IMG/VR virus record: IMGVR_UViG_3300048672_001051
Span: 62,001 to 126,000 of that record
DNA length: 64,000 bases
Reading direction: 5' to 3' (one strand)
A program made the position numbers and the translations under genes. Shown here piece by piece: positions 3,328 through 46,111 of this stretch; positions within the stretch are counted from its first letter, which is position 1, and every line of letters starts with the position of its first letter. Under the pieces are notes generated by a model. The model did not search any database and was not told where the DNA came from. It saw only the letters and a list, made by a program, of their open reading frames with translations.

Positions 3328-3919
3328 TTAGATCTAATTGTAAAACATCTTCTTCATTTAACCAACTAAATCTATGGCTGTGTACGCCTTTATAGCGATA
3401 GCCTTGGTAGTAACTCCTTACGGCGTTAAAGCGCTGGTCTGTAAATCCAACTGCATAGTATAGATAATTACTAAAAGTTAAATCGTAGTGTGCAATATAT
3501 GACACGTTGTACAACGTGTCATCATACTCCTGGTGCTTAGTCCTATAGTACCGAGACATCGCCGTAGAAAACCCCTCATCCCAGCAATTAATTGCTACCT
3601 CATAATGTTCTTCATTTTTAAAAATACCAAACATAGCTGCAAATCTCAAAAACATTTGGTTGTTAGCACCATCTAAAACATTACCAACATTTACATCAAA
3701 ATCTTGATAAAGCCTGCACAACTTAGTGAATAAAATATCATTATTATACAGCTTATCAGGTATGTGTTTAATTATATAAGGCTTTCTTTCTTTCGAGGTA
3801 GCTAAATGTTTACCAAGATGTTTAACACGCGACCATGGATACTTGCCGTACTTTGTGCCGTAATAATTATCTGAATAATTATTACGTTTATCATAACAAT
3901 CTAAATTAATATGATGCAT
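3233..3919 (-). CDS. hypothetical Tyr-rich protein
   Basis: 228-aa ORF, last of the minus-strand run; its 3' end overlaps the convergent gene by 95 nt. Confidence 0.55.
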   Translation of the reverse strand: MHHINLDCYDKRNNYSDNYYGTKYGKYPWSRVKHLGKHLATSKERKPYIIKHIPDKLYNNDILFTKLCRLYQDFDVNVGNVLDGANNQMFLRFAAMFGIFKNEEHYEVAINCWDEGFSTAMSRYYRTKHQEYDDTLYNVSYIAHYDLTFSNYLYYAVGFTDQRFNAVRSYYQGYRYKGVHSHRFSWLNEEDVLQLDLTTDLYTHYLQKTDSCQLPKFQVFSPQVLSTH

Positions 3920-3928
3920 AAATATACC

Positions 3929-4105
3929 CTAAATTACATGATTATCAATAGTTTCAATAGTTGGATTAAAAACTACTAGCTTAGAGTCAATAGCAAATAT
4001 GTAGTATGCGCCAGTAGTTTCTTCAAATTGATAAGTTATTTCAACTTCTTCTTTATCAAAAAATTCATTAGGGTCAATTTTATATTTAATCGTTTTTAAA
4101 ATCAT
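3929..4105 (-). CDS. small hypothetical protein (58 aa, not in ORF track)
   Basis: Translated by hand: MILKTIKYKIDPNEFFDKEEVEITYQFEETTGAYY...; fills the gap between sbcC and the next gene. Confidence 0.45.
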   Translation of the reverse strand: MILKTIKYKIDPNEFFDKEEVEITYQFEETTGAYYIFAIDSKLVVFNPTIETIDNHVI

Positions 4106-5924
4106 GGCATAAATTCAAGTCTATTATATTAGCATCATCATAGGTTTTGTGGCTTATGATAATAATTTGATATCCAGTGTTTGCAAGAGTATTGAAACAA
4201 GTGTTGAGCATATTAAAACGATCTTCATGTAAAGACTCGTCTAATTCGTCACCGATAAAAACACAAAAATTATCTTTATAATACATTTTTAAGATGGCTA
4301 ATCTTAAAGCAATATTAGAAAGAACTTGAGCGCTACCTTCAACTAAATCGAGTGATATGTTGTCTACTAATAATTTAAAATCATTTGTTATTTCAACAGT
4401 AGTTCTTTCGCCGCCAGTCATCAAATTTAAATAATTTGAAGCAGCATAATTTAAAGTGGGTATAGCAACAAGTTGAACATCTTTTTTAGTCTGTTCTGCG
4501 TACTGTAAACAATTATTTATAAACCTAAGTTTTGAATTATGAGTATTAATGTCAACTAATAATTTATTTTTTAGTTCCATACTATAATCATACATAGTCT
4601 TTGAACGTAAGTAATTTAAAGCATCATCATAAAAACTAACTAACACACTATACTGGGACTCTGCGGCAATAATAGATTCTTCTAACGTATCTAAAGGATA
4701 TCCTAAGATTGCTTCAAGCTTCGCAATCTCATTTAAAATATCAGAGTTACTTAAAAGTATCTCATTATATTTTAAATGTTGGTCTAATTTAAGTTTAGAT
4801 GCCTTATAATCTACATTAGAAATTGTAGCTAACAGTTCTAATTTTTCAGACATTAAAGATTCATAAATATTTTTATCTATAGTAAGCCAATTAATATACT
4901 CTTCAATTTTATTTAAAGAGTACTTAGGCGCTGACTTATAAATACCTTGTGCCAGAAGACTATCAATACTTTCTTGATTCACATTTACAATTGAAGAGCA
5001 TGTCGGACATGTTAAATTGTGCTCTTGGTATTTTAATAAAGTTAGATAATTTTTATATTGAGGATGTTGTTCTTTAATTTCTAAAAGATTATCCAGAGTA
5101 TCATCAATATTATAGGTTTGTATACGACTCAACTTTAAATCTATAGTTTTTAAACTATCGTTAGCCGTATTAAAATCATTACAGATTTTTAAAAGTTCAT
5201 CATAACTTTCAGCTGGAAGGCTCGGGAACTCTTGAACTTTATTTTTATAAAAATTATACTTAAATAAATATTCTTTTTGAGTTGCAATAGCATTAAAATG
5301 TTCTGCAACTAAAAGTTTAATATCAGCTAACTGGTCTTCAGTAAACTCTTCAAATTCTGAATTAATTTCAAAATCAGGAATATTATTATCTGCTAGTAAA
5401 GTTTCATAAGTTTTCTTTTCAGCAGTTAAAATAGATTTTTGTTTTTTAAAGTAATCTATTAATAAATAAGAATCTTTTAAACCAGTCACAGTCTCAATTA
5501 AATTTAATAAAGGTTTTTCTTTCAACGCCGAAAAAGATAACAAGTCATGTTGCTTACAAAAATTAGTTAAATAAAATACATCCTTACCATAAGTTAATAA
5601 TTCTTCTATGTGTTTGTTTGCCGCTGTAACACCACTACAAATTTTTATATATTTAGTATCTAGATAGTATAAAGCTACTGTTGAGCTTCTTACAATTTTA
5701 TAAACTTTATCAACTACTTTAAAGATTAAAGTTACAGACAAGTCTTTATAATTACTTGCAGAATCTCTTAAAGCTCTAGCTCCAAAAAAAGCATAATTAA
5801 TCATCTCTACAAGTTCAGTCTTCCCAGTACCATTCTTACCTGTAATAACATTTAAGCCGTTTGTAAAAGTGATAAAAGAATCTTGATGTGCAAAAGAATT
5901 TTGTATATGTATACTAATCAACAT
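4086..5924 (-). CDS. sbcC: SbcC/Rad50-like (gp46-like) recombination ATPase
   Basis: Walker A GKNGTGKT, central CPTC zinc hook inside coiled coil, Walker B/D-loop FIGDELDESL, H-loop IIISH. Confidence 0.9.
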   Translation of the reverse strand: MLISIHIQNSFAHQDSFITFTNGLNVITGKNGTGKTELVEMINYAFFGARALRDSASNYKDLSVTLIFKVVDKVYKIVRSSTVALYYLDTKYIKICSGVTAANKHIEELLTYGKDVFYLTNFCKQHDLLSFSALKEKPLLNLIETVTGLKDSYLLIDYFKKQKSILTAEKKTYETLLADNNIPDFEINSEFEEFTEDQLADIKLLVAEHFNAIATQKEYLFKYNFYKNKVQEFPSLPAESYDELLKICNDFNTANDSLKTIDLKLSRIQTYNIDDTLDNLLEIKEQHPQYKNYLTLLKYQEHNLTCPTCSSIVNVNQESIDSLLAQGIYKSAPKYSLNKIEEYINWLTIDKNIYESLMSEKLELLATISNVDYKASKLKLDQHLKYNEILLSNSDILNEIAKLEAILGYPLDTLEESIIAAESQYSVLVSFYDDALNYLRSKTMYDYSMELKNKLLVDINTHNSKLRFINNCLQYAEQTKKDVQLVAIPTLNYAASNYLNLMTGGERTTVEITNDFKLLVDNISLDLVEGSAQVLSNIALRLAILKMYYKDNFCVFIGDELDESLHEDRFNMLNTCFNTLANTGYQIIIISHKTYDDANIIDLNLCHDFKND

Positions 5925-6978
5925 TTAAATAAACCTTGTCTGTTATGATAGTTTTTAAGCAGTTCAACTCAGCCTCATTTAAAACTTTCGCTTCTAAAAT
6001 ATTTTTATAGAAACAACTATTAAAATCAACAACATTTGAAACAACTGTAGTTTGTGATGGAGTAGTACTTGACGGTTCAAGTTCTTTTAACTTAAATGTT
6101 AAAGCTAAACACTGTATAGGTTCTGCTAACACATAATTCTTATCAACAAGAAGCCTAACATTTTTATTTTTTAAAGTACTAACATCTATTTCAGAAAGTT
6201 TATCAATATCTATTGTAATATAAAATTCTGAAGTACTATCTTCCGCGTGAGTATAAGGTTGCATCGAACCTGTACATATATAGTCTGTATTGTAAACTTC
6301 ATTTTGAAAAGGTGTATGCTCGTGCCCCGAAACAAAAAGACTGGTACAGCTTATAAGTTCTGAAGAAGGCGCCCAAGTTTTTTCACTGCTTACAACATCC
6401 CAATGTCCAAATGAAACCATTTCAGCAGTAGGTAAAACAGCACTTTGTCTAAATTTAGAATCACCAAAAGGATTATAGCAATCAAAATAAAAATAAAAAG
6501 GTATCTTAATGGTGTCATCAATTAACTCATAAATAGGATTATTCGTTGTAGTCTTTAAATTTGATAAATTTAAAGTATCTAACATAAGTGTTAAAAGTTC
6601 GTAAGAACTTTTTTTAGATATATCCTTAGATAAATCGTGGTTGCCAGAAATTAAGTAGTAGTTAATATTGGTATTTAGTTCAGCGGAATTTTTTAATATA
6701 TTAAAAACTTCTAATTTAACTGTAGGCGTAACTACTGATTTATCAAATAAATCTCCTACTATAACAATATGAGTTATATTCAAATTACAATCAGGATTTA
6801 AAAGAGTTTTAAAAGTTTGTAAAACACTTTTCTCACGAATGCCTAGATTTGAGCTTAAAACACCGGTCTTAAATACTCTACCACAGTGAGGATCACCAAT
6901 TGTTTGCACTTTAATTTTGTAGTCGGGAAATTCAATTATAGGATTTCGTTCACCTGTTACAGTGTACCTAATAGCCAT
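5914..6978 (-). CDS. sbcD: SbcD/Mre11-like (gp47-like) nuclease
   Basis: Metallophosphoesterase motifs GDPH, VGDLFD, SGNHD, GHW, SGHEH; adjacent to sbcC. Confidence 0.9.
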   Translation of the reverse strand: MAIRYTVTGERNPIIEFPDYKIKVQTIGDPHCGRVFKTGVLSSNLGIREKSVLQTFKTLLNPDCNLNITHIVIVGDLFDKSVVTPTVKLEVFNILKNSAELNTNINYYLISGNHDLSKDISKKSSYELLTLMLDTLNLSNLKTTTNNPIYELIDDTIKIPFYFYFDCYNPFGDSKFRQSAVLPTAEMVSFGHWDVVSSEKTWAPSSELISCTSLFVSGHEHTPFQNEVYNTDYICTGSMQPYTHAEDSTSEFYITIDIDKLSEIDVSTLKNKNVRLLVDKNYVLAEPIQCLALTFKLKELEPSSTTPSQTTVVSNVVDFNSCFYKNILEAKVLNEAELNCLKTIITDKVYLNVD

Positions 6979-7786: not shown

Positions 7787-10700
7787 TTAGTGGCATTGAC
7801 CCCAATTAGAACCTACGTTCCATGCCATACCAAGCTCTAAAGAGAACTCGTTATATTTAACTGCACGGTCAATACCTTTTCTAATAATGTCAGGTAAAAT
7901 ATTGTTGAGTCCAACATAATACCTACCATCTTCAAGATGTCCAATTTCACTTGTAAGCGCGTTAGCTTTTACAAATTCTTTAGCATCTTCTTCTTTATCA
8001 AATAATTTAACTGTACACATGTTCCGAGGTACTGCGTACTGGTTTTCATCCAATTACATTACGAGTGTCGCAACACACTCTCCGCCTTTTCAGGTAACTT
8101 TTATAAGTTATTTTACGGGGTTAGACCATATCACGATGTTATATAGTAACATCCCTTCCGTTTCGAATCTACATTAGCTTTAGATTCTACTCTACTCCAT
8201 TCATTTTACAATGTGTTTCGATGGCCGTTGAACTTTTTTAAAAATTATAATTACAAGATATGTGTTTCCAAGTGCTTTTTTGCTTGAGTGCTCTAACTAA
8301 AGCATAGTTGTAGCCTAAGTCTCTTATATTAGCAGATGTATGGCCCGACTCGAGTAATTTGCAAATAGCGTGAACAGTATTTTCAGTTGTAATGCAATTA
8401 GCATTATTTGAACCAACTGCTGACCTATTATTCAGATCAAAAGAGTATTTAATATTATAACCATGAGTACACCATTCAAGATTACTTAACGCATTATTTC
8501 TACGATTAGCATCTTTGTGGTTAACTTCTGGTAAATTTTCAGGGTTTGGTATAAAAGCTTCTGCTAAAAGTCTGTGAATACTCTTGCATAATCTTTTACC
8601 GCCAACTCTTAAATTAAGTATTAAATAGCCTTTGCCATTATCTTGGGGTGTCAAAAGTTTTTTATGTTTATTAAAAACTTCACCATTTACAGTTATAAAA
8701 TAACTGTCATATATTTTTTTCATTTTTAAACTTAGCTGCTGATTGCCATATTATATTTATTGTAAATCTAATTACATATTAATTAGAAATTCAATTTTAC
8801 TATAACTTAGGTTTCCAGTCAATTAAAAAGGTTATTCGATATATATCACTATATAAAGCCACAATGAATTATGGTAAGCGATCATTTGATAAATTTTATA
8901 ATCTGATTTATTGTGAACTAAAGGGTTACCCAATAAATCTAACTCTTCTAATTCTTGACAAATCAGAACAGTTGATAATTTTGCCATAGCAGCGCCAGTG
9001 CCTTGAAATAAAAGATTCAATAAACTGTGCTTACTACGCGACATTAGTTTACGGCCATCTATACCAACAATATATTGTTGACCAGAGTCCATCCACTCTT
9101 GTTCTACTTTATCTTTAAGTTCTTTTAAAGCTGGAACAGATTCCCAAAAAAGATCGTATAGACGTTGAGCTTCTTCCGCCGAAATGCTTAGCATCTTCAT
9201 CAGTTTAGTTGCCTGAGCGCCATAAAGAACAGCGTAAGTAAAACTTTTAGCTGCATCTCTAGTAATGCCAAGTTTTCTGGCATTAATGCAATTACCAGAA
9301 ACAAATATCTTATCAGAACGTTTCACTACAACAAAACTTGAAGGTACTGTAACACAACCTACAAAACCATCATAGTCAACTTCTGAATAATAATTTTTGT
9401 TAACTGTAAGGTTAGACTTATTATTTGAAATATAGCACCGATAAATAGTGCAAATGCCTTTAACAGTAGACTTAACAAATTTATTAAAGTGACCTGCACG
9501 ATTTGTTAAATGGCATAAAGTTTGAATAGTTTTAGCTGTTTTAATTGATGTTGTATCTAACACAACATCACTATTTCTAGTAACAGTACCATCCCAAAAC
9601 TGAATCTCATCTAAAACTAAATTCATTTGGCGTGAACTTAATGTTAATAAATTATCTGTAAGCGATTTATCTAAACTTAAAAAATTACGAATTTTAACTG
9701 TGTCTTCTGAAGAATTTAAATAAAAATGATAACTAGTTTCTCTATCTTTTGGGTAAGTTGTAGTATGTGTATAAGTTATCCCAAGATTATCTAAAATATC
9801 TTTAAGCCTTTGAACTTTGCGTTCTTTACTAAAAGAGAACTTTATTCCAGAACAATCTTTAAGTAAATAAGCATCTGCTTGAACAGCTACAGCTAATTTT
9901 AAAAAGTTATCAGAATACTCTGAATTATCTTCTTGCGTGAGAATACCAGTGTTAGGTATGACTCTTGCAGAAGATCTTTTAGTAAAATTATTTGCAGTAG
10001 TTACAGACCAATTCGTGCTATTAGGTAATCTTGAAACTACACGATGTTCTGGAGTGACTAACTGATCTGTTCTAGCTGATTTTATATTTATCATCTTACC
10101 TGTATGTCGCCTCCAAATAACATTAGAAGGTTTCACAAAGGAGATTACACCATCTAGCCACTGTGCAACAAGACAATCTGTAGTGACTTGGTCGAAAGTT
10201 TTCCAACCAGTACTAGTTAATATTTGAGTATCTTCTGAAAAACAATGAATTGAATTAGGTTTTTCAGCCAATAAGTCACGAGCTAAATTTACACCATCTG
10301 TATAATTTAAGCAAAAGTTAGCTTGCACTCGAGCTTCAAGAGAAGCAAAGTCAAAAGCCATTTGCATAAAGCCGTCACCAGCTTTAAACTGACTTCTAAT
10401 AGCGTAGCCTTCAATAGAGGTTACGCGAGGGACATTACAACATAAGTGTTCCCTTGTCATCGCTAGTGACAAGGCGTTTAAAAAAAACTGCTTCATATTT
10501 CTATGAAGATCGGACTATATCTTTGGCATATTTTGGTATACCATAATCTGTTTCGGGTGTCAAAAGCTTACACCCTACGTTATAAAAACTAGTCTCTGAG
10601 CATTCTTCCTATCTTGTTTCTCAACAATATTTAGAAGCTTCGTGGCTGATTGTCCATTGTAATATCTTCTTTATTTTAAAACATTCACGCTTATCTTTTA

Positions 10701-12360
10701 AGATTACGTTGTAGTTAAAGAAGTTTTAGGAGTTTCCAGCAATTAAGATTATTTTAAGTGGGCTTGTAAAGTCAACACCACTGTGCTTATACCTACCGGT
10801 AGAAGCCCCGATAGTGTCAGCTGGAGTAGGCACACGGCCATCCTCCCGAACCATAGACAAATATCCAGTTAGCGGCTCGCCAGATTCATCTTCACTGCCA
10901 CCTGCAATGCTTGCACGTCTATGTTTATAAGTAAGATACTTATTAACAGCACCGACAAACTCTGCATCAGCTCCAATCTTTTCTAAGTTTGGACATATAA
11001 CCTTTTCAGTACCAACACGTAAGCATGGGCCTGTAGGCACTCGTAGAGGCTTGTTAGGGCTTTGACGGTACTTAGCCATCAAGTCATACTTTAAAGACTG
11101 TGGCTTCGATTTGAGCAGCGCTAGACGAGCCTCTCGGAAAGGACCATTAAGAGTACTCTCAACATACCTATCAATTACTTCTACAACTTTATTAGGATGT
11201 AATTTTTGTTTCTTAGCGTCTTTAGTAACATCACGCTCTTTCCACTCAAATGGATCCCAGCCTAAAGTAATTAGATAAGCTTTTAAATGGTCTAAATCTT
11301 TGATAGTTGCAGTTGTTGTTTCTTTAACACAACCTTCATAAGGAAGTTGATATTCTTTATCTTCGAAAATGTAAACATTTTCATCAGTAATAGTACCACC
11401 ATGCTTTTCTGCAAATTTTAACATTATTGCAGACACTGAACCATCAGCTTTAAATTGACGTTTAGGTAAAGTATAAACTTTCTGTTCACCTTTATTTAAA
11501 CGCTTGTCTGGAAGTATAGGATTTACAAATTCTTCAATATCATGAAGAACTTTATCAAACTTTACTAAACAATCTTTAGCCTTTTCAGTATCATATTCAA
11601 AACCAAATAACTCTTGTTTTAAAGTAATATCTGCAAGTTTAATTTCCATCGCGTAAGCTTTACCCCAAGCCCAGCCATCTTTTTCAGATTCAAGTATATT
11701 ATAAATATCTATGTTTACAAGCGTATCTTGTAAACAATACGTAACCATCTTATAAGAATAATTTTCAAATTCGTGGAAATCGCCTTTATAATTACCAATC
11801 TGTTTACCCCAAGCGCCTAAGCCATGCCCGAATATACGGTCAGGATTTAGTAGCTTAGACCAAAGTAAAGTATCAGTAAATACTATAGGAGTACCGAAAA
11901 CTTTAGAGACAGTTTTATATTTAGAACCACCAGTATCTGGATACCCAACTTCATATTCAATCATGTCAAATAATTGAAGAGTTGGCATGTCAAATTTAAT
12001 ACCATTATGAAAAATTAATTCTTCTGGTTCAAATTTTTTAAAAAACTTTTCAAGGTTTTGTTTAGTTAACACTACTTTTTTAATTGAATTATAAAGTATA
12101 CCATCTTGATCTGGAACTATACGTTCAGCTAGACAACTTTTAATCTCATCGAAATAAGATTCAATTTTTGTAATAGGTGCTTTATAACTCATAAATTCTT
12201 TTGGAATAAAAGCAAAAGAATTTCTAGTGTCAACACAAGTAACCATAACGACATGTAGCTTAGCAGTCGGTTTTAAAGTGTACGGCATTGTAGCATATGA
12301 TAACATATTAGCTAGTAAATTGTTAGACTCTATGTCTAAAACAACTTTTTTGAACATCAA
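7787..12360 (-). CDS. polA: family A DNA polymerase, three exons (12360-10775, 10440-8871, 8050-7787), containing an intein
   Basis: Exo I LDIES, motif A DFASLEAR, motif B RDAAKSFTYAVLYG, motif C YH|DE restored by splicing. Joined exons total 3420 nt (1139 aa, 821 aa after intein removal). Confidence 0.93.
8051..8870 (-). mobile_element. group I intron (polA intron 2, 820 nt) with HNH homing endonuclease
   Basis: 5' splice site after ...TACCAT (U.G with guide GTGG); terminal G before GATGAA; P10 TTCATT/GATGAA; P ATTGACTGGAAAC, Q AATCAGCAGC, R GTTCAACGGCCA, S GATATGGTCT. Confidence 0.92.
8238..8723 (-). CDS. intron-encoded HNH homing endonuclease (I-HmuI-like)
   Basis: [37 protein letters not shown] motif. 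Confidence 0.9.
   Translation of the reverse strand: [161 protein letters not shown]
9291..10244 (-). mobile_element. intein in polA (318 aa) with LAGLIDADG-type endonuclease domain
   Basis: H|CFSEDTQILTSTGWK, block B VTPEH, LAVAVQADAY and QFWDG motifs, C-terminal FVSGN|C; removal restores NSIHCINARKLG. Confidence 0.92.
10441..10774 (-). mobile_element. group I intron (polA intron 1, 334 nt, no ORF)
   Basis: Splicing gives HSGV-CNVPRV; P10 TTACAA pairs with 3' exon TTGTAA; P ATTGCTGGAAAC, Q AATCAGCCAC, R CTCAGAGACTAG, S AAGATATAGTCC; ends in G. Confidence 0.92.
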
Positions 12361-40294: not shown

Positions 40295-42688
40295 TTAAAC
40301 ACATGAAGTATAATTAGCAACACTATTAAGAACTTGATAATGTTGCAATGCTTTTGTTGTAGTACCGGTAGAGCCGTAACGAGCAACATACGCTTGAGCT
40401 GCTGAAACATCTTCACCAGCTAAATGAGTGCGAATGATCTCTTGAACAGTCCGGTAATCATCAAGTGTACGAGAGGCTGACATATTTGAACCACTAATAA
40501 AAGTAACTTTTTTATGTGTGACAATTTCAGTCAAAACACATTGAAATAAGTTAGCTAGTAGTGACGCAGCAATATCATTGCCACTGAACATTTGCTCAGG
40601 ATTATCGTCAGTACCTCGAGCGTCTACCTCAGCACAGGATTCTATTTGAACTTCTTCAAAGTCGCTAAAAATATCTGCATGATCAATTGTATAATAATCA
40701 CGACCTAAACGGTTGTAATAAACTTGACCATTAAATAAATTAACGCCAGCAGAAAAATAGTAATTATTCCAGTTAAATGCTTCAGAATTAGCTGAGATAT
40801 ACAAATCTAATGCTTTTTTAAAACCTTCATTATCGACTAAATTCATAACATGACTTGTATTATCAATACCAATATCTTTGATATCAATAAATAAATCAAG
40901 ATCGCGATTTAGGTCAGCAGGATTTTCATAAGCAAATTCATCGTAGTCTGAATAGTAGCCAAACTTCGGCAAGTACGAAACAGTGATATTTTGATATAAA
41001 CCGTTGTAACGGTTTGACAAAACTTCAGCTTTGTTTAAGCCAATATCTGCTGAAATAAAGTTCTGCCGAAGCAAATTCTTTTGTTCCCATTTGTTACAAT
41101 TTGAAACTTAGATATTTATTATATTTTCTATCTAAAAAAATAGAAGAATCTTTGTACAATAAATCTAAGAATGTATTTACATTTTGCTTACCAGAAAGCG
41201 TTAAAGCATAACAGCAATTTTCAGTATTAAATCTTTTATATAATTTAGTATTAAATTTAATTGAACAATCAGCCTCAATTAAACTTTTAACTTCATTTAA
41301 AAAAGATTTAGTTCCAGCAATAGATGCACAGTAGCGCGTATAGCCATCCTTACATAAAGATTTAGACATACTGCCATCACCATCAAAGTAACCCCTAATA
41401 AAATGAATAAAAAATTCTTTTGGGATATTTGGAAACTTAAAATCTGTTGTTTTATTTCTGGTAAAACCAAGACTGCGTAATTTGCTAATCATGTGTAAGT
41501 TTGAAAAAGACAGCGAACAAACATTTGTTATTTTGCCAGTAAAGGTACATAACTGTGTAAATGTTTTAATTTTAACGTCACTTTTTAAACAAATTTTAAT
41601 TTTTTCTAAGATTTCAATATCTTTTGAGTTTAATGCAATTTTAAGCTCATAGTCACCGACGTAACCGTCAGCAGCAATAAATCCTAAAATGTAAGCTTTT
41701 TCCTCAGTATTTATGATATCAAAAAAATTATAATCTGCTTTAATAGTATTAAGCCAATCAACTGGCCTTTTAAAATTGTGTCTCTTAGCTAGTGCGTTTA
41801 CATTGACTAGGCTGCAGTTATATTTTATAGCTAACTCTGAAGTTGTCAGACCTTTATCATAATCTTTTAATAAATTTATTACGTCATTTTTAACATGAAA
41901 TAAACCTGCTTTGAATAAACGCCTTTCAGCAGTTTTTTCAGAACAATTTAAAATACGCATAACGTCATTTTTATCAATAAGATTTTTAAAAGAAAGACTT
42001 TTTAAAAGAGTTAACTCTTTAATAATAACATCTTGTTTAATTGGTAAGTACATTATTTTGACTCCTATAATTGTACAATGTGGCGAGACCACTATTGAGA
42101 AAAACAATCATATCAGACAAAATTTCAAACGTCAACCTCCTTTCTGTTCGGGGTTGAACTTTGGCTTGATATTATCTTTAAATAATACCTAGTGTATAAT
42201 ATGCCAAAGAGCAGACTATCGCATAAACTAATGTAATCCCTACATTAGTTTCTCTTTCGCTTAGTCGTTCACGGTGCCTTGAGTTTTAATAGATTTTTAA
42301 ATCTATCTCATGCTTCCGCCTTGTTGTCCTTATACTAGGAGTTCCAAGTCAATTAGAAAGAGTTTTATATCGTCCAACATTAAACGATATCGCCATCAAC
42401 AAGAATAATTTCAACTTTAAAGTTGTGACTACGTTTATGCAAAAGATCATTATAGATCTTTAACAGTTTTGGAAGAATCCAACTTGTAGTACCACCAGCG
42501 CCAAAAATAAATAACTTCTGATCTAAGTACTCCCGTGGAAGCTCTTTTGCATTTTTTAACAGACGAAGAAAAGCAAATTTATCTAACGCATCAATAGCTG
42601 AAATTTTTTCAGGTTGTACTGGACGATATTTAAGTGCACGAATCCACTGCGCCAGTGTGATTTGTTTTAAAATAGGTTCTACTTTCAT
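40295..42688 (-). CDS. ThiF/E1-like adenylyltransferase, two exons (42688-42383, 41086-40295), 365 aa
   Basis: FIFGAGGTTS nucleotide-binding loop; spliced VDGDIV|EQKNLLRQNF; NKAEVL; SCAE...EQ...NDIAA as in PRTRC-type ThiF. Confidence 0.9.
41087..42382 (-). mobile_element. group I intron (1296 nt) in ThiF gene
   Basis: P1 ATATCGTT/GACGATAT ending in U.G; P TTGACTTGGAAC, Q ACAAGGCGGAAG, R GTGAACGACTA, S GCGATAGTCT; terminal G before GAACAA; reading frame restored. Confidence 0.9.
41094..42053 (-). CDS. intron-encoded double-motif LAGLIDADG homing endonuclease
   Basis: YILGFIAADGY and FIRGYFDGDGS; likely start MYLPIKQ with AGGAG upstream. Confidence 0.88.
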   Translation of the reverse strand: MYLPIKQDVIIKELTLLKSLSFKNLIDKNDVMRILNCSEKTAERRLFKAGLFHVKNDVINLLKDYDKGLTTSELAIKYNCSLVNVNALAKRHNFKRPVDWLNTIKADYNFFDIINTEEKAYILGFIAADGYVGDYELKIALNSKDIEILEKIKICLKSDVKIKTFTQLCTFTGKITNVCSLSFSNLHMISKLRSLGFTRNKTTDFKFPNIPKEFFIHFIRGYFDGDGSMSKSLCKDGYTRYCASIAGTKSFLNEVKSLIEADCSIKFNTKLYKRFNTENCCYALTLSGKQNVNTFLDLLYKDSSIFLDRKYNKYLSFKL

Positions 42689-42731: not shown

Positions 42732-45700
42732 TCAGTGTTGCGTGACTAAAGCGTTGTGATAGCTGTCTATCAAGAATTTCGCCTCTTCGGCAGGATCCAT
42801 ACTGTCATACGGTACGTCATCATCAACTACAATAATGCTAGAATTTTCTGCATCAGGCGCAGAAAAAATGTCTTGCTCAGAACCGACAGCCAGAAGACCT
42901 TGATTGAAAAAGTGACTTAATTCATTCAATTGATCTTCTGTAAAAGCTGTTTGATAGCCAACAATATCTAACAAAGTTGTAAACAAGTCTACAATTTCGT
43001 CCATGTTTAGTGGTACAGAAGTTTTAGCGTAATAAGGCGTAGGCAACAAACGTCCCAACAACTTCTCAAACTCTTGCAGTAACCGGTGCTGTTGAGTATC
43101 AATAGCCCAAAGAGTTAAATAGACACTTAACGGCTGATATCTTGGATAAACCGGTGGAACATATGGTTTACCTTTACCAGCAGGTGGTGTATAACCAAGA
43201 GCACCAACTGACTTATTGTACGAAGCAATTTCAACAATTTTATCTTCAGAGCCAGCAGGTACACTGTAATCAGAATCTTCTTGAAGTTTTTCAATATCGC
43301 GATCAAAAATATCGTTAACTTTCAAAACAACTTGTTGTTGATTTGAAGCAGCACGAACAACAATTTCAGGGACTTCATTACTAAGCTTACCAATAACGCC
43401 AAACAAACGAGAAGCCTTCTCGTCGTTTAAATCACCACCACTGAAGAATGCCATAATATTCAATACAGATCGTTAATCTGTACCCGCACCTATTAAAGAT
43501 GCTGCTTATACTTTCATATAAGAGTAGACTATATCTTCTTTCAGTTTAAACTGAAAGCTCTCCATTTCCACCCACTTGGGTGTACGATACTCGATTCATT
43601 CAAAAAGAATGTCTTTCTCTAGTCGTTGAACTTTTACCGTAGAATAAATTCTTTAGGTACTTAGCTGCTGATTATCCAATTCTATTAATTTTCAAACATT
43701 CACACTTATCTTTTCAGATTATGTTGTAGTTTAATAGACTCTTATGAATTAATAATACAATCTAATACATATTTTTCTGTAATTAATTTTTTATAAATAA
43801 TTCTAACTAATTTAATATTATTATCTAAACAATATTGATTTTTAATCTCATCACATTCTTTTGAATATTCTGAGTACCATATATGATTTTCATCATAATG
43901 TTGTAACCCATCCGCTTCAATCATAAGATTTTTAGAGGGGATATAAAAATCAATCCTTAAAGGGTATCCTTTAGGAGATAATAATTTTTCATTAGTATAT
44001 TCACAAATAATATTATTATAATTAGCACTTAATGCATTATAAATATTATTTTCAAAGTTAGAATTACTTTTAAAAAATCCTAGCATATTATTTAAATTAC
44101 ACATTGAAATTTTTAATTTAGTTAAAGTTTTATTAGATCTTTTAATAGTGTTAATAATTTCACTATTAGTACAATATCTATTCTTACTTAAAATAAATTC
44201 TAAAATTTCTTTTTCTACTACCTCTTTAGTTAATTCTTCAGAGGATCTTCGAGCTTTTGCTGCACAAGATTTTGAGCAAAATATGGTATTAAGTGTATAC
44301 TTAGTGCCATACTGCATATTAGTGTATAAATTTAAATATTCTTTATTACAGAATTTACATATTTTTTTATTACTTTTCATATCCTATTTCCAATTATATT
44401 TTAATTTCTGCTATTAAAAAGCATTAATATAATTATAATTGAAAGACTTATCAAAGTCGAGGAAAGGAACTTCCAGCAATTAGAAGAGTTTTACATGAGC
44501 ACATTTAAGCTTTACTCATATCTACATGCGACATTGTAGATGTGTTATGAATTGTTTTTTAATATACAATTCCTTGACAAGAATTTCTTTGTAATATAAA
44601 CTTTACGTCATTACACCATGACTATATAAGTCAAAATTTTACGACATAAAGCAGGTACATTAAAATTTGTTAAAACTAGAAAAATACAAAGACTATATTA
44701 TAACAAATATAGCGCAAAACAAACCAATTAGCATAATAGCTAAAGAGTTAAATGAATACCCTCAAGCAGTTAGAAACGTAATAAAAAAATACTTACCTGA
44801 TAAAAAATTTATACATGATCAGGGAAATATTTCTTATTTTAATAAAATAGACTGTGATGCTAAAGCATACTTTATAGGCTTCATTGCTGCAGATGGATCA
44901 CTAGTAAAACGTAAAAGTGATAATAGCATAGCATTAAGTATAACTATCAATAAAAAAGATAAATTAATACTAGATACTTTAAAAAATTGTATAGGTTGTG
45001 AAAATCCTGTAAGTTTTTTAAAATTAAATGATTTAGTAAGGTTTGTTATACAAAACAAACAAATATCAGATGATCTACAAACTTACGGAATTGAGCCTAA
45101 CAAATCTTTAACTATGCCGTCAATTATTCATAAAATACCGAAAGAATACAGAAAAGCATTCTTAAGAGGTTATTTTGATGGCGATGGTAGTGTATTCAAA
45201 AGTTCTAAAAACAAATATTATGTAACTATAAGAGGCACGTTAGAATTTTTACAAGCATACATAGAAGAGTTTAATTTAAGTTCGTATTCGTTAAAAAAAT
45301 ACGATTACGAAAAAATTGGGAAATTAACAACAGGGTCTAAAGACTCTATTAAAAAATTTATAACTATGTATGAAAATTCTGAAATACACTTACAAAGAAA
45401 ACATGAAATATTTTTAAATTTCATGGAAAAACATTGTCAAGATCAGACTATCTCATCACCCTAGTTTAACTAGGGTGTGCGGCACTCGTGTCGGTCTTAT
45501 TGGACTAGATCCTCAACCGTTAGTCGTTACACCCAACTGACTACTTTTACTCTATTCGTCAGTCTTGGCACGGTATTGTCCTTTTTCTAGGAGTTTCACC
45601 GTTAGCATTAACTATATTAGTTAACACACCCTTTTCAGGTTCACCGCATTATTCAATTAGCATTACTGCTAAAGGCCACTCGCTTTTAATGGATATCCAT

Positions 45701-46111
45701 AACGATGAAAAAGTTTGAATTGTTAAGCATCGCAGGATCATTTTGAAAATTAACTGTAGCCCCACCAACACGTTGTTCAGGCACATACAGAAAATAGTCT
45801 TGCTTTGCAATATCCCAATAAATTGAGATATACACTTCTGATCGCATCTTATTTTTAATAACGCGGAAAAATTCAACGATATTAGTAAGAAGTGCGACGG
45901 GAATTTTCGGAAGTGCAGAAACGTAGCTAACTTCACAAGTTTGATTAAGACCTAAACGCTTTAGGTCAATCTTATCAATTTGAATAGTAAAAGTGCCTAC
46001 AGGCTCTTTACGACGTTGCCAAATACCATTAGCAAAAGCAGCGTTTGAGAACTTTTTAGTTTCATCAAAACATTCTACTGTAAAGCCATTTAAATCAGGA
46101 AACATACTCAT
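42732..46111 (-). CDS. JAB/MPN metalloprotease (PRTRC protein A-like), three exons (46111-45689, 44531-44514, 43451-42732), 386 aa
   Basis: Spliced sequence reads ...SEV...VPEQ...MDIH|SHVDMS|AFFSGGDLNDE, the canonical E...HSH...S..D JAB motif. Confidence 0.9.
43452..44513 (-). mobile_element. group I intron B of JAB gene (1062 nt)
   Basis: P1 ATGAGT/GCTCAT; P10 AATGT/GCATT; P ATTGCTGGAAG, Q AATCAGCAGC, R GTTCAACGACTAG, S AAGATATAGTCT; ends ...ATTATG. Confidence 0.92.
43742..44380 (-). CDS. intron-encoded Vsr/EDxHD-like homing endonuclease
   Basis: CKFC...FCSKSC zinc motif; RIDFYIPSKNLMIEADGLQHY...DEIKNQYC. Confidence 0.8.
   Translation of the reverse strand: MKSNKKICKFCNKEYLNLYTNMQYGTKYTLNTIFCSKSCAAKARRSSEELTKEVVEKEILEFILSKNRYCTNSEIINTIKRSNKTLTKLKISMCNLNNMLGFFKSNSNFENNIYNALSANYNNIICEYTNEKLLSPKGYPLRIDFYIPSKNLMIEADGLQHYDENHIWYSEYSKECDEIKNQYCLDNNIKLVRIIYKKLITEKYVLDCIINS
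44574..44602 (+). promoter_or_regulatory. sigma70-like promoter for the antisense endonuclease
   Basis: TTGACA (44574-79), 17 nt, TAAACT (44597-602), 65 nt upstream of the plus-strand ORF. Confidence 0.65.
44667..45464 (+). CDS. LAGLIDADG homing endonuclease, antisense within intron A
   Basis: YFIGFIAADGSL and FLRGYFDGDGSV; homologous to the 41094-42053 enzyme. Confidence 0.88.
   Translation: MLKLEKYKDYIITNIAQNKPISIIAKELNEYPQAVRNVIKKYLPDKKFIHDQGNISYFNKIDCDAKAYFIGFIAADGSLVKRKSDNSIALSITINKKDKLILDTLKNCIGCENPVSFLKLNDLVRFVIQNKQISDDLQTYGIEPNKSLTMPSIIHKIPKEYRKAFLRGYFDGDGSVFKSSKNKYYVTIRGTLEFLQAYIEEFNLSSYSLKKYDYEKIGKLTTGSKDSIKKFITMYENSEIHLQRKHEIFLNFMEKHCQDQTISSP

What the first reader, a model, noticed from the sequence alone, without database searches (positions are those of the whole stretch)
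44532..45688. Antisense homing endonuclease in intron A, with its promoter built into the P9 helix
The LAGLIDADG ORF (44667-45464) is on the plus strand while the intron and host gene are on the minus strand. Its last codons run antisense through the S element of the ribozyme core. The 3' arm of P9 (TTGTCAAG) reads TTGACA on the opposite strand and sits 17 nt from TAAACT, a near-consensus sigma70 promoter. One sequence would then serve as both ribozyme helix and -35 box. The antisense transcript could also pair with the pre-mRNA and regulate JAB splicing. The other three intron endonucleases in this window are in sense orientation.
Basis: partly seen in the sequence, partly recalled or inferred. 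Interest (0 to 1): 0.72.

Follow-up and report, generated by a model that had tools for sequence, protein, structure and literature searches.

The report
Backward endonuclease gene inside phage intron
A self-splicing intron in a jumbo-phage gene carries its homing-endonuclease gene backwards, and in eleven related sequences the gene's likely promoter lies on the same bases that form one of the intron's RNA helices.

Summary
A group I intron occupies 44532-45688 on the minus strand. It splits a JAB/JAMM (PRTRC protein A-like) gene inside the codons of its HxH metal site. Its P9 loop holds an intact double-motif LAGLIDADG gene on the plus strand (44667-45464). The last ten codons of that gene run antisense through the P9 5' arm, the P7 3' strand (S element) and P8.

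In this sequence alone, neither the 8-bp P9 pairing (shuffle P about 0.1) nor the promoter match stands out clearly from chance in AT-rich DNA. The comparative evidence is what carries the case. Eleven related metagenomic loci (endonuclease 47-94% identical) keep the same backward layout. RNAalifold on full-length introns recovers the roughly 860-nt-range P9, with one covarying pair. TTGAC[A/T] is followed at 16-17 nt by a -10-like hexamer in every locus, while the spacers diverge. The seven P9 pairs under the -35 never covary, although neighbouring peripheral helices do. Phage ME3 has the same intron without an endonuclease, and there P9 is a different, local hairpin.

No strand-specific RNA data exist, so the transcript and any antisense control of splicing remain untested. 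I rate this a new variant of a known kind. Antisense endonuclease genes are described for nuclear rDNA introns, and I found no phage example.

The parts
45689..46111 (-). Exon 1 of the host gene (JAB/JAMM, PRTRC protein A-like), ending ..VMDIH. The first His of the HxH site is its last codon.
   Evidence: ORF list. It is 45% identical to phage ME3 'PRTRC system protein A'. The U.G pair of P1 is at 45689.
44532..45688 (-). Intron A, a group I intron of 1157 nt. It has extra hairpins between P7 and P3', the position of P7.1/P7.2, so it is probably subgroup IA.
   Evidence: Rfam core hit of 48.8 bits, E 1e-10. P1, P2, P3, P4-P6, P7.1/7.2, P8 and P9 are recovered with 37 compensatory pairs in 9 homologous introns. 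The terminal G is 44532, and P10 covaries.
44667..45464 (+). Antisense double-motif LAGLIDADG homing endonuclease gene (265 aa, TTG start) in the P9 loop.
   Evidence: Pfam LAGLIDADG_3 at 3e-14. There are 552 homologues. dN/dS against the 94%-identical copy in L002 is 0.12. The TTG aligns with ATG in relatives.
45434..45441 (-). P9 5' arm CUUGACAA. On the plus strand it forms the codons ..C-Q-D.. of the endonuclease.
   Evidence: It sits at the P9 position of the Rfam model. It pairs in all homologues.
44573..44580 (-). P9 3' arm UUGUCAAG. The plus strand of the same bases holds the -35 box.
   Evidence: Seven pairs are invariant, and position 8 is A-U, U-A or U.G.
44574..44602 (+). Predicted sigma-70-type promoter of the endonuclease gene: TTGACA (44574-44579), 17 nt, TAAACT (44597-44602).
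   Evidence: Scan score 10 of 12. The architecture is kept in 11 relatives with diverged spacers. It is one of only two plus-strand genome hits that are non-coding with an ORF about 65 nt downstream.
44603..44666 (+). Predicted 5' untranslated region of the endonuclease mRNA. It has a weak hairpin (44607-44622) and AGG (44653-44655) before the TTG start.
   Evidence: Most relatives have a hairpin of unrelated sequence at the same place just after the -10, and AGGAG before ATG. This part is inferred.
45402..45425 (-). Local hairpin P9a (CAUGAAAU/AUUUCAUG) just inside P9, lying within the endonuclease's C-terminal codons.
   Evidence: Compensatory changes in homologues (columns 313-320/329-336).
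44549..44572 (-). Hairpin between the P9 3' arm and the 3' splice site. The stem covaries and the A-rich loop is conserved. On the plus strand it lies at about -26 to -49, where an UP element would be.
   Evidence: Alignments: stem GAAUUG/CAAUUC here, GAACUA/UAGUUC in L003, AAAUAG/CUAUUU in L006, with the loop AAUUAAAAAA conserved.
45446..45453 (-). P7 3' strand (S element) AGAUAGUC, read antisense as the codons ..Q-T-I-S.. of the endonuclease.
   Evidence: Rfam alignment. The C-terminus ..QD[QK]TISS.. is in the same frame in W, L002, L003, L004 and L006.
44514..44531 (-). Exon 2, only 18 nt (SHVDMS), between intron A and intron B.
   Evidence: A relative's 78-kb contig joins 43451 directly to 44514, so it lacks intron B exactly. 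Translation.
43452..44513 (-). Intron B (group I, 1062 nt) with a sense-strand endonuclease-like ORF at 43742-44380 and its own promoter-like sites at 44460-44426.
   Evidence: Rfam 27-44 bits. Precise absence in the relative. Promoter scan.

Best explanation
[quoted passage not shown] The phage is distantly related to Acinetobacter phage ME3. A promoter-bearing LAGLIDADG homing-endonuclease cassette sits inverted in the terminal loop of P9.

Host RNA polymerase with sigma-70 starts at TTGACA-17-TAAACT, near 44608-44612, and transcribes the plus strand. The mRNA has a 5' untranslated region of about 55-60 nt and a weak TTG start. The endonuclease would cut intron-less JAB alleles of co-infecting phages and so spread the intron.

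The intron RNA comes from the other strand, so it carries no translatable endonuclease frame. Ribosomes therefore never run through the ribozyme. The roughly 860 nt of insert are bridged by P9.

The 3' strand of P9 is the complement of the -35 box. The 5' strand of P9, together with the P7 3' strand and P8, is the complement of the gene's last ten codons. The same bases thus serve as ribozyme helix, promoter element and coding sequence. This fits the observation that these seven pairs are frozen while other peripheral helices drift.

Shown: orientation, intron anatomy and boundaries, conservation of the layout, P9 covariation, conservation of promoter geometry, and purifying selection on the gene.

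Inferred: promoter activity, transcription start, timing, endonuclease activity and target, self-splicing.
For: - Antisense LAGLIDADG gene.
- Group I core and P9 position.
- Boundaries. L003 exon 2/3 also continues the TIGR03735 profile at position 142.
- Same inverted layout in L002, L003, L004/5, L006, L007/8, L009, L014, L015 and L016.
- P9 is predicted across 890 alignment columns by RNAalifold on nine full-length introns. 70 of 72 cells are paired, and position 8 is A-U, U-A or U.G.
- The promoter is kept: TTGAC[A/T], 16-17 nt, then TAAACT, TACAAT, TATTAT, TATACT, TAGTAT, TAATAT, TATATT or AATAAT (L011 has TAAAAT). The background chance of such a -10 is 0.137 per site, and the spacers are unalignable between groups.
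- In the seven-sequence analysis, P2, P5, P6a, P7.1, P7.2, P8 and P9a show two-sided changes in 50-100% of their pairs, while the seven pairs under TTGACA show none.
- ME3 has the homologous intron at the same site without an endonuclease and without CTTGACA. Its P9 is a local hairpin of other sequence.
- dN/dS is 0.12.
- The other mobile endonuclease genes of this phage also have sigma-70-like sites at 10 of 12. So does a plus-strand ORF in the tRNA cluster.
Against: - There is no RNA evidence for a plus-strand transcript. The RNA runs gave only unstranded 151-nt contigs of a relative over the intron ends, with next to no depth over the ORF.
- In the window alone, the P9 complement (P about 0.1) and the promoter match are not clearly above chance.
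- The genome is not enriched for canonical sigma-70 promoters, so the phage may rely mainly on other promoter types.
- Only one P9 pair truly covaries. Position 8 is unpaired in L014 (A.A) and L011 (G.A), and position 7 is A.A in L015, where the -35 box reads TTGACT.
- The frozen 5' arm could be explained by coding or ribozyme constraints without any promoter.
- No terminator for the plus-strand transcript was found.
- The Rfam score is just under the gathering threshold.
Confidence: 0.62

Rival explanations
1. P9 is real, but the 'promoter' is a by-product. TTGACA is conserved only because it is one strand of P9, and the -10-like hexamers are what AT-rich DNA gives anyway. The endonuclease would then be transcribed from a phage-specific promoter or by read-through from elsewhere on the plus strand, or hardly at all.
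For: The genome-wide count of TTGACA-N16-18-TAnnnT is barely above expectation. A -10-like hexamer occurs at 13.7% of random sites. No transcript has been seen. T4 segD is a known antisense endonuclease gene with no promoter of its own (PMC2988022).
Against: A -10-like hexamer is present at 16-17 nt in all of about eight independent lineages, where chance gives about 0.137 each. Three of them show TG one base upstream of the -10 hexamer, as in an extended -10 (L006, L014; the ThiF-intron gene). All neighbours for about 40 kb are on the minus strand, so there is no upstream plus-strand transcription to borrow. A purely structural P9 would be free to covary like P2, P6a and P8, and it does not. 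The endonuclease-free ME3 intron uses another P9 sequence.
Confidence: 0.2
2. The promoter is real, but the long-range P9 is not. Both arms would be conserved for other reasons: the 3' arm as the -35 box, and the 5' arm as ribozyme junction or codons. The functional P9 would be the local hairpin 45402-45425.
For: Seven of the eight pairs never vary, so they say nothing about pairing. The local hairpin has its own compensatory changes. An 8-nt complement arises in 10% of shuffles. L014, L015 and L011 have a mismatch at position 7 or 8.
Against: Position 8 changes on both sides, from A-U to U-A or U.G. The helix extends to ten pairs in the L004/L006/L007 group with different bases. The C-to-U change in L002 and L003 keeps a G.U pair that exists only on the minus-strand RNA. 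The helix starts exactly where the Rfam model expects P9. Without it, about 860 nt would separate the core from the 3' splice site with nothing to bring them together. RNAalifold recovers it from full-length alignments.
Confidence: 0.12
3. The endonuclease gene is a decaying relic, or has become a maturase or some other host-useful protein. The conserved layout would then reflect vertical inheritance, not active homing.
For: L007, L008 and L009 carry a copy shortened to 226 aa that stops before the core overlap. The layout is found only in this one gene context. The TTG start suggests low expression.
Against: dN/dS is 0.12 between W and L002. Frames of 260-271 aa are intact in nine loci, with both catalytic motifs present. 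Intron and endonuclease content around the site is highly mosaic between close relatives, as expected of active mobile elements.
Confidence: 0.1

Closest known systems
I-DirII and related antisense homing endonuclease genes in nuclear rDNA group I introns (Didymium iridis S956-2; L2066 introns of myxomycetes and fungi)
   Same: The endonuclease gene lies on the strand opposite to the group I intron and host gene. It is expressed from its own promoter, independently of host-gene transcription (PMC3073962; PMC9548176).
   Different: Those are eukaryotic. They involve His-Cys box enzymes, an RNA polymerase II promoter, a spliceosomal intron and a poly(A) tail, and the host gene is an rRNA gene. 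Here the setting is a phage protein-coding gene, a LAGLIDADG enzyme and a bacterial sigma-70-type promoter. The promoter -35 box coincides with a ribozyme helix strand, which is not described for those introns in the papers read.
T4 td, nrdD and nrdB introns (I-TevI, I-TevII, I-TevIII)
   Same: They are phage group I introns, in T4 genes of nucleotide metabolism. Their endonuclease genes have their own promoters embedded in the intron, and expression is kept from disturbing splicing (PMC2988022).
   Different: The T4 genes are in sense orientation. They use phage middle and late promoters and need an RNA hairpin to block translation on the pre-mRNA. Here inversion removes the translation-versus-folding conflict, and the promoter looks like a host sigma-70 promoter.
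'Core creep' of intron ORFs into ribozyme structure (Edgell, Chalamcharla and Belfort 2011)
   Same: The end of the endonuclease ORF overlaps essential ribozyme elements (P9, P7 3' strand, P8), so one sequence is both coding and structural (PMC3073962 has a section on core creep).
   Different: As I know the described cases, they are same-strand overlaps. Here the overlap is antisense, so the codons are the complement of the catalytic-core strand.
Homologous intron in Acinetobacter phage vB_AbaM_ME3 (KU935715, unannotated)
   Same: The insertion site is the same (after ..DIH), and the 5' end and core are homologous.
   Different: It has no endonuclease gene and no CTTGACA. Its P9 is a short local hairpin, and a tRNA-Met gene lies inside the intron.

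Membership tests
Group I intron (Rfam RF00028) | Covariance-model score at or above the curated gathering score | tested here: inconclusive
   The score is 48.8 bits against a gathering score of 50, E 1e-10, with the full model 1-253 matched. The hit is missed in the whole-window scan with stricter filters.
Group I intron (Rfam RF00028) | Conserved core helices P3-P8 and P4-P6 supported by covariation | tested here: met
   RNAalifold on 9 homologous introns gives 83 pairs, 37 of them with two-sided changes, covering P1, P2, P3, P4, P5, P6, P7.1/7.2, P8 and P9. RNAalifold did not predict P7 itself; it follows from the Rfam alignment.
Group I intron (Rfam RF00028) | U.G pair at the 5' splice site in P1, terminal G at the 3' splice site, and P10 with the 3' exon | tested here: met
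   CCAU|U pairs with AGUGG. The terminal G is at 44532. GCGA/UCGC is replaced by GUGA/UCAC in L006, L007 and L011.
Group I intron (Rfam RF00028) | Removal restores the host reading frame; self-splicing | not testable with these tools
   The frame and the HxHx7Sx2D motif are restored on paper.
LAGLIDADG homing endonuclease | Pfam LAGLIDADG domain above cut-off and two LAGLIDADG motifs with acidic residues | tested here: met
   PF14528 scores 53.5 bits against a cut-off of 22.5. The motifs GFIAADGS and GYFDGDGS are present.
LAGLIDADG homing endonuclease | Site-specific cleavage of the intron-less allele | not testable with these tools
   Only purifying selection (dN/dS 0.12) and the mosaic presence of neighbouring elements speak for activity.
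Bacterial sigma-70 promoter | -35 TTGACA, 16-18 nt spacer, -10 TAnnnT | tested here: met
   The site scores 10 of 12. The geometry is kept in 11 related loci.
Bacterial sigma-70 promoter | Mapped transcription start or polymerase dependence | not testable with these tools
   No stranded RNA reads exist for this phage.
JAB/JAMM, PRTRC system protein A (TIGR03735), the host gene | HxHx7Sx2D metal site; profile score above cut-off | tested here: inconclusive
   The motif is formed across the exon 1-2-3 junctions. TIGR03735 scores only 20.4 bits against a cut-off of 101.8 on L003 exon 2/3, though at the expected profile positions 142-184. Exon 1 is 45% identical to the ME3 protein so named.

The most novel reading that the evidence does not exclude
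The overlap works as a mutual lock. The -35 box is a P9 strand, and the gene's last codons are the complement of the P9 5' strand, the P7 3' strand and P8. The endonuclease cassette therefore cannot be deleted or silenced without damaging the ribozyme, and through it the host JAB gene, which freezes an otherwise short-lived selfish gene in place. In addition, the convergent endonuclease mRNA, which has no visible terminator, runs antisense across the ribozyme core and exon 1. It could then time or throttle splicing and expression of the JAB gene.
Probability: 0.2. Interest if true: 0.75.

Novelty: new variant of a known kind. Interest (0 to 1): 0.6.

Why it matters
Homing endonuclease genes in bacterial and phage group I introns are described as lying in the sense strand. 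There, translation and ribozyme folding compete, and special devices keep them apart, such as T4's late promoters and RBS-hiding hairpins.

This locus, with at least eleven relatives, shows another solution in phages. The gene is turned around and given its own host-type promoter, and the ends of the cassette are built into the ribozyme itself.

It offers a compact natural case of one DNA stretch carrying three codes: promoter box, RNA helix and, at the other arm, codons. It is also a tractable system for asking how selfish genes become fixed in their intron hosts. Finally, it shows that genome annotation of phages such as ME3 truncates intron-split genes.

Tried and rejected
- Megablast of the region against 50,697 phage records found no match.
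- A search of IMG/VR with the exon 1 protein found no relative. DNA-pattern scans gave only three more loci, L009-L011.
- Searches for RNA-seq found two RNA runs holding 6% of the words. When laid on the region, they gave only unstranded 151-nt contigs of a relative. One is colinear with the DNA across intron B, exon 2 and intron A (44469-44594), so it is unspliced RNA or DNA carry-over. No exon-exon joint was seen, so the transcript question could not be tested.
- Single-sequence statistics for P9 and for the promoter are not significant on their own.
- I considered the local hairpin 45402-45425 as the true P9. It is real and covaries, but it lies inside the long-range helix, so I call it P9a.
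- I considered that the ORF is a pseudogene. This is rejected for W, L002, L003, L004, L006, L014, L015 and L016 (intact frames, dN/dS 0.12) and stays possible for the 226-aa copies in L007-L009.
- I considered coding constraint as the reason for the frozen 5' arm. It cannot explain the frozen 3' arm, which is non-coding.
- Five literature searches for an antisense endonuclease gene in a phage or bacterial group I intron found none, and the 2014 review of bacterial group I introns does not mention orientation. The library is incomplete: Bechhofer et al. 1994 on phage beta22 is not held. Absence of a report is therefore not proven.
- The count of structure pairs was not used. It needs a typed 1274-character structure string, so pair counts were taken from fold_alignment and scripts.
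Full report
**Context.** The window is bases 62001-126000 of a single 229,656-bp contig with 34.8% G+C. The best DNA holder is a freshwater metagenome run, probably the source. Almost all genes in the window are on the minus strand. The nearest named relative is Acinetobacter jumbo phage vB_AbaM_ME3, whose 'PRTRC system protein A' (a JAB/JAMM protein) is 45% identical to the ORF at 45686-46111.

**The observation.** The plus-strand ORF 44667-45464 is a LAGLIDADG endonuclease: Pfam PF14528 at 3e-14, with two motifs that keep their acidic residues. On the minus strand, Rfam aligns the whole group I model to 45423-45698 at 48.8 bits against a gathering score of 50, E 1e-10. The alignment places the P7 3' strand AGAUAGUC at 45446-45453 and the 5' strand of P9 at 45434-45441. 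The model finds no local partner for that strand. The endonuclease frame ends ..CQDQTISSP and stops at 45462-45464. Its last ten codons are therefore the complement of the P9 5' arm, the joining bases, the S element and part of P8. The complement of the P9 5' arm lies about 860 nt downstream at 44573-44580. Read on the plus strand, those bases contain TTGACA (44574-44579), followed by 17 nt and TAAACT.

**Intron boundaries.**
- Exon 1 ends ..GAU AUC CAU at 45689. The U pairs with G in P1 (CCAUU/AGUGG).
- The intron ends with G at 44532.
- The next four exon bases, UCGC, pair with GCGA immediately 5' of the P1 guide, which is a textbook P10. In L006, L007 and L011 both sides change, to UCAC and GUGA.
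- A 78-kb contig of a relative about 90-95% identical (wastewater run X2, fetched as L002) joins 43451 directly to 44514. This defines intron B as 43452-44513 and exon 2 as only 18 nt.
- The joined exons read H|SHVDMS|AFFSGGD, the JAMM signature HxHx7Sx2D. L003, which lacks intron B, reads SHNNFGAFFSGQD after its intron A and continues the TIGR03735 profile at position 142.

**Is it more than chance?** In this sequence alone, hardly. An 8-nt complement between the 31 nt after P7 and the 135-nt tail appears in 10% of shuffles. The region has 25 promoter-like sites against 18 +/- 5.6 expected. The genome has 25 TTGACA-N16-18-TAnnnT sites against 16.8 +/- 3.8 expected. The case rests on relatives.

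**Relatives.** The protein search found 552 homologues. I fetched the contigs of eight, at 94, 70, 57, 54, 51, 50, 48 and 47% identity, and three more loci by a DNA pattern. In every locus that holds the gene, it lies on the strand opposite to a 141-163-aa exon 1 ORF and to all its neighbours. The inverted arrangement is therefore old and stable.

**P9.** RNAalifold on nine full-length introns (1274 columns, endonuclease gene included) predicts the long-range helix at columns 297-304 with 1192-1199.
- Five of the eight pairs are invariant.
- One is C-G in eight sequences and U.G in L003. L002, which was not in this alignment, has the same U.G.
- One is A-U in eight sequences and A.A in L015.
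- Position 8 is U-A in four, A-U in two, U.G in two and A.A in one.
- In the L004/L006/L007 group the helix runs on to ten pairs, with different bases in each.

This is modest but genuine covariation, at the place where the Rfam model expects P9. A local hairpin just inside it (45402-45425) and a hairpin after it (44549-44572) also covary.

**Promoter.** All eleven loci tabulated have TTGACA (TTGACT in L015), then 16 or 17 nt, then a -10-like hexamer with A2 and T6. The hexamers are TAAACT, TACAAT, TATTAT, TATACT, TAGTAT, TAATAT, TATATT and AATAAT. L011 has TAAAAT, read. In L006 and L014, TG lies one base upstream of the hexamer, as in an extended -10. The spacers cannot be aligned between groups. 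Such a hexamer is found at 13.7% of random sites, so its presence in about eight lineages is unlikely by chance. The start codon follows 30-64 nt later. It is ATG with an AGGAG-type Shine-Dalgarno sequence in most relatives (L014 has only GAGA) and TTG in W and L002. Most lineages have a hairpin of unrelated sequence right after the -10.

Three further observations tie TTGACA to the gene and not to the ribozyme:
- In the seven-sequence analysis, peripheral helices P2, P5, P6a, P7.1, P7.2, P8 and P9a show two-sided changes in 50-100% of their pairs. The seven P9 pairs under TTGACA show none.
- ME3 has the homologous intron at the same site with no endonuclease and no CTTGACA. Its P9 is a local hairpin of other sequence.
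- Of the 20 plus-strand genome hits to the pattern, only two are non-coding with an ORF about 65 nt downstream. One is this site. The other precedes a plus-strand ORF among minus-strand tRNA genes, next to plus-strand HNH genes.

The two sense-strand intron endonuclease genes nearby also have 10-of-12 sites upstream.

**The gene is alive.** dN/dS between W and L002 is 0.12. The C-terminus ..QD[QK]TISS.. is read in the same frame over the ribozyme core in five loci. L007-L009 carry a version shortened to 226 aa.

**Mechanism.** My preferred reading is that a promoter-bearing endonuclease cassette sits inverted in the P9 loop. Host polymerase transcribes it independently of the JAB gene. The intron RNA is never translated, so folding is undisturbed. 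P9 bridges the insert. The overlaps freeze the sequence.

**What remains unshown.** The transcript itself, its start and end, the time of expression, cleavage activity, self-splicing, and any antisense effect on JAB splicing all remain unshown. The RNA runs gave only unstranded short contigs of a relative, and none was spliced.

**Comparison with what is known.** Antisense endonuclease genes with their own promoter are known from nuclear rDNA group I introns (I-DirII and L2066 introns). Intron-internal promoters are known from T4. ORF overlap with the core is known as 'core creep'. I found no report of an antisense endonuclease gene in a phage or bacterial group I intron, though the library is incomplete. 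I therefore rate this a new variant of a known kind, well supported by comparison and untested at the bench.

Noticed in passing
window 44514-44531 (exon 2), with introns at 44532-45688 and 43452-44513: Two group I introns are separated by an exon of only 18 nt, which encodes SHVDMS of the JAMM metal site. Relatives have their second intron at other positions: 30 nt after intron A in ME3, and apparently 6 nt after it in L004. The active-site codons are therefore a hot spot for intron insertion.
   Followed up: partly
L002 5843-6469 (-) and L008 2482-3153 (-); corresponds to window 45491-45520: In two relatives the same intron A carries a second endonuclease gene (LAGLIDADG_2). It is in sense orientation and sits in the P7.1/P7.2 region. 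One intron thus holds two endonuclease genes on opposite strands.
   Followed up: partly
L001 (phage ME3, KU935715) 5433-6100 and 6131-6463: The annotated 144-aa 'PRTRC system protein A' of ME3 is only exon 1. Two unannotated group I introns follow it. The first is homologous to intron A, lacks an endonuclease gene and contains the annotated tRNA-Met gene (5641-5715), plus a weaker tRNA-like hit at 5539-5621.
   Followed up: partly
window 40295-42688: The neighbouring ThiF-like gene also looks split. The pieces are an exon at 42380-42688, a group I core at 42199-42392 (30.6 bits), a sense LAGLIDADG ORF at 41094-42107 with TTGACG-17-TATGAT (TG upstream) at 42135-42107, and an exon at 40295-41074 with a weak PRTRC_ThiF match.
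   Followed up: partly
L012 (genome 132500-139500): plus-strand ORFs 1893-2405, 3472-4068 and 4742-5500: Three plus-strand ORFs (one HTH and two HNH endonuclease-like) are interleaved with minus-strand tRNA genes. The first is preceded by TTGACA-17-TATAGT at L012 1798-1826.
   Followed up: partly
L014 1-2254 and L015 1-2196: In the most distant relatives, the intron-bearing JAB gene is followed by ThiF and then a reverse-transcriptase (RVT_1) gene. I did not determine whether these contigs are phage or cellular.
   Followed up: no
window about 45575-45628 (minus strand): Two covarying hairpins lie between the 5' strand of P3 and P4 of intron A. This is an unusual place for peripheral elements. 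ME3 has its tRNA genes at the position of the second hairpin.
   Followed up: no
window 44520-44541: A 7-bp hairpin (AUCUACA/UGUAGAU on the minus-strand RNA) encloses the 3' splice site of intron A. It is present in W and L002 only.
   Followed up: no
window 43494-43825: The core of intron B has very high contig depth in the wastewater runs (up to about 4000 summed word depth). Several variants lack the ORF, for example one that skips 43731-44463. Close relatives of this ribozyme are therefore abundant in other organisms.
   Followed up: no
window 8238-8723 (-) and 10491-10837 (-): There is an HNH_3 endonuclease ORF on the minus strand. Separately, an ORF-less group I intron (62.8 bits) lies between two long ORFs at 8832-10496 and 10726-12360. 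The host gene was not identified.
   Followed up: no
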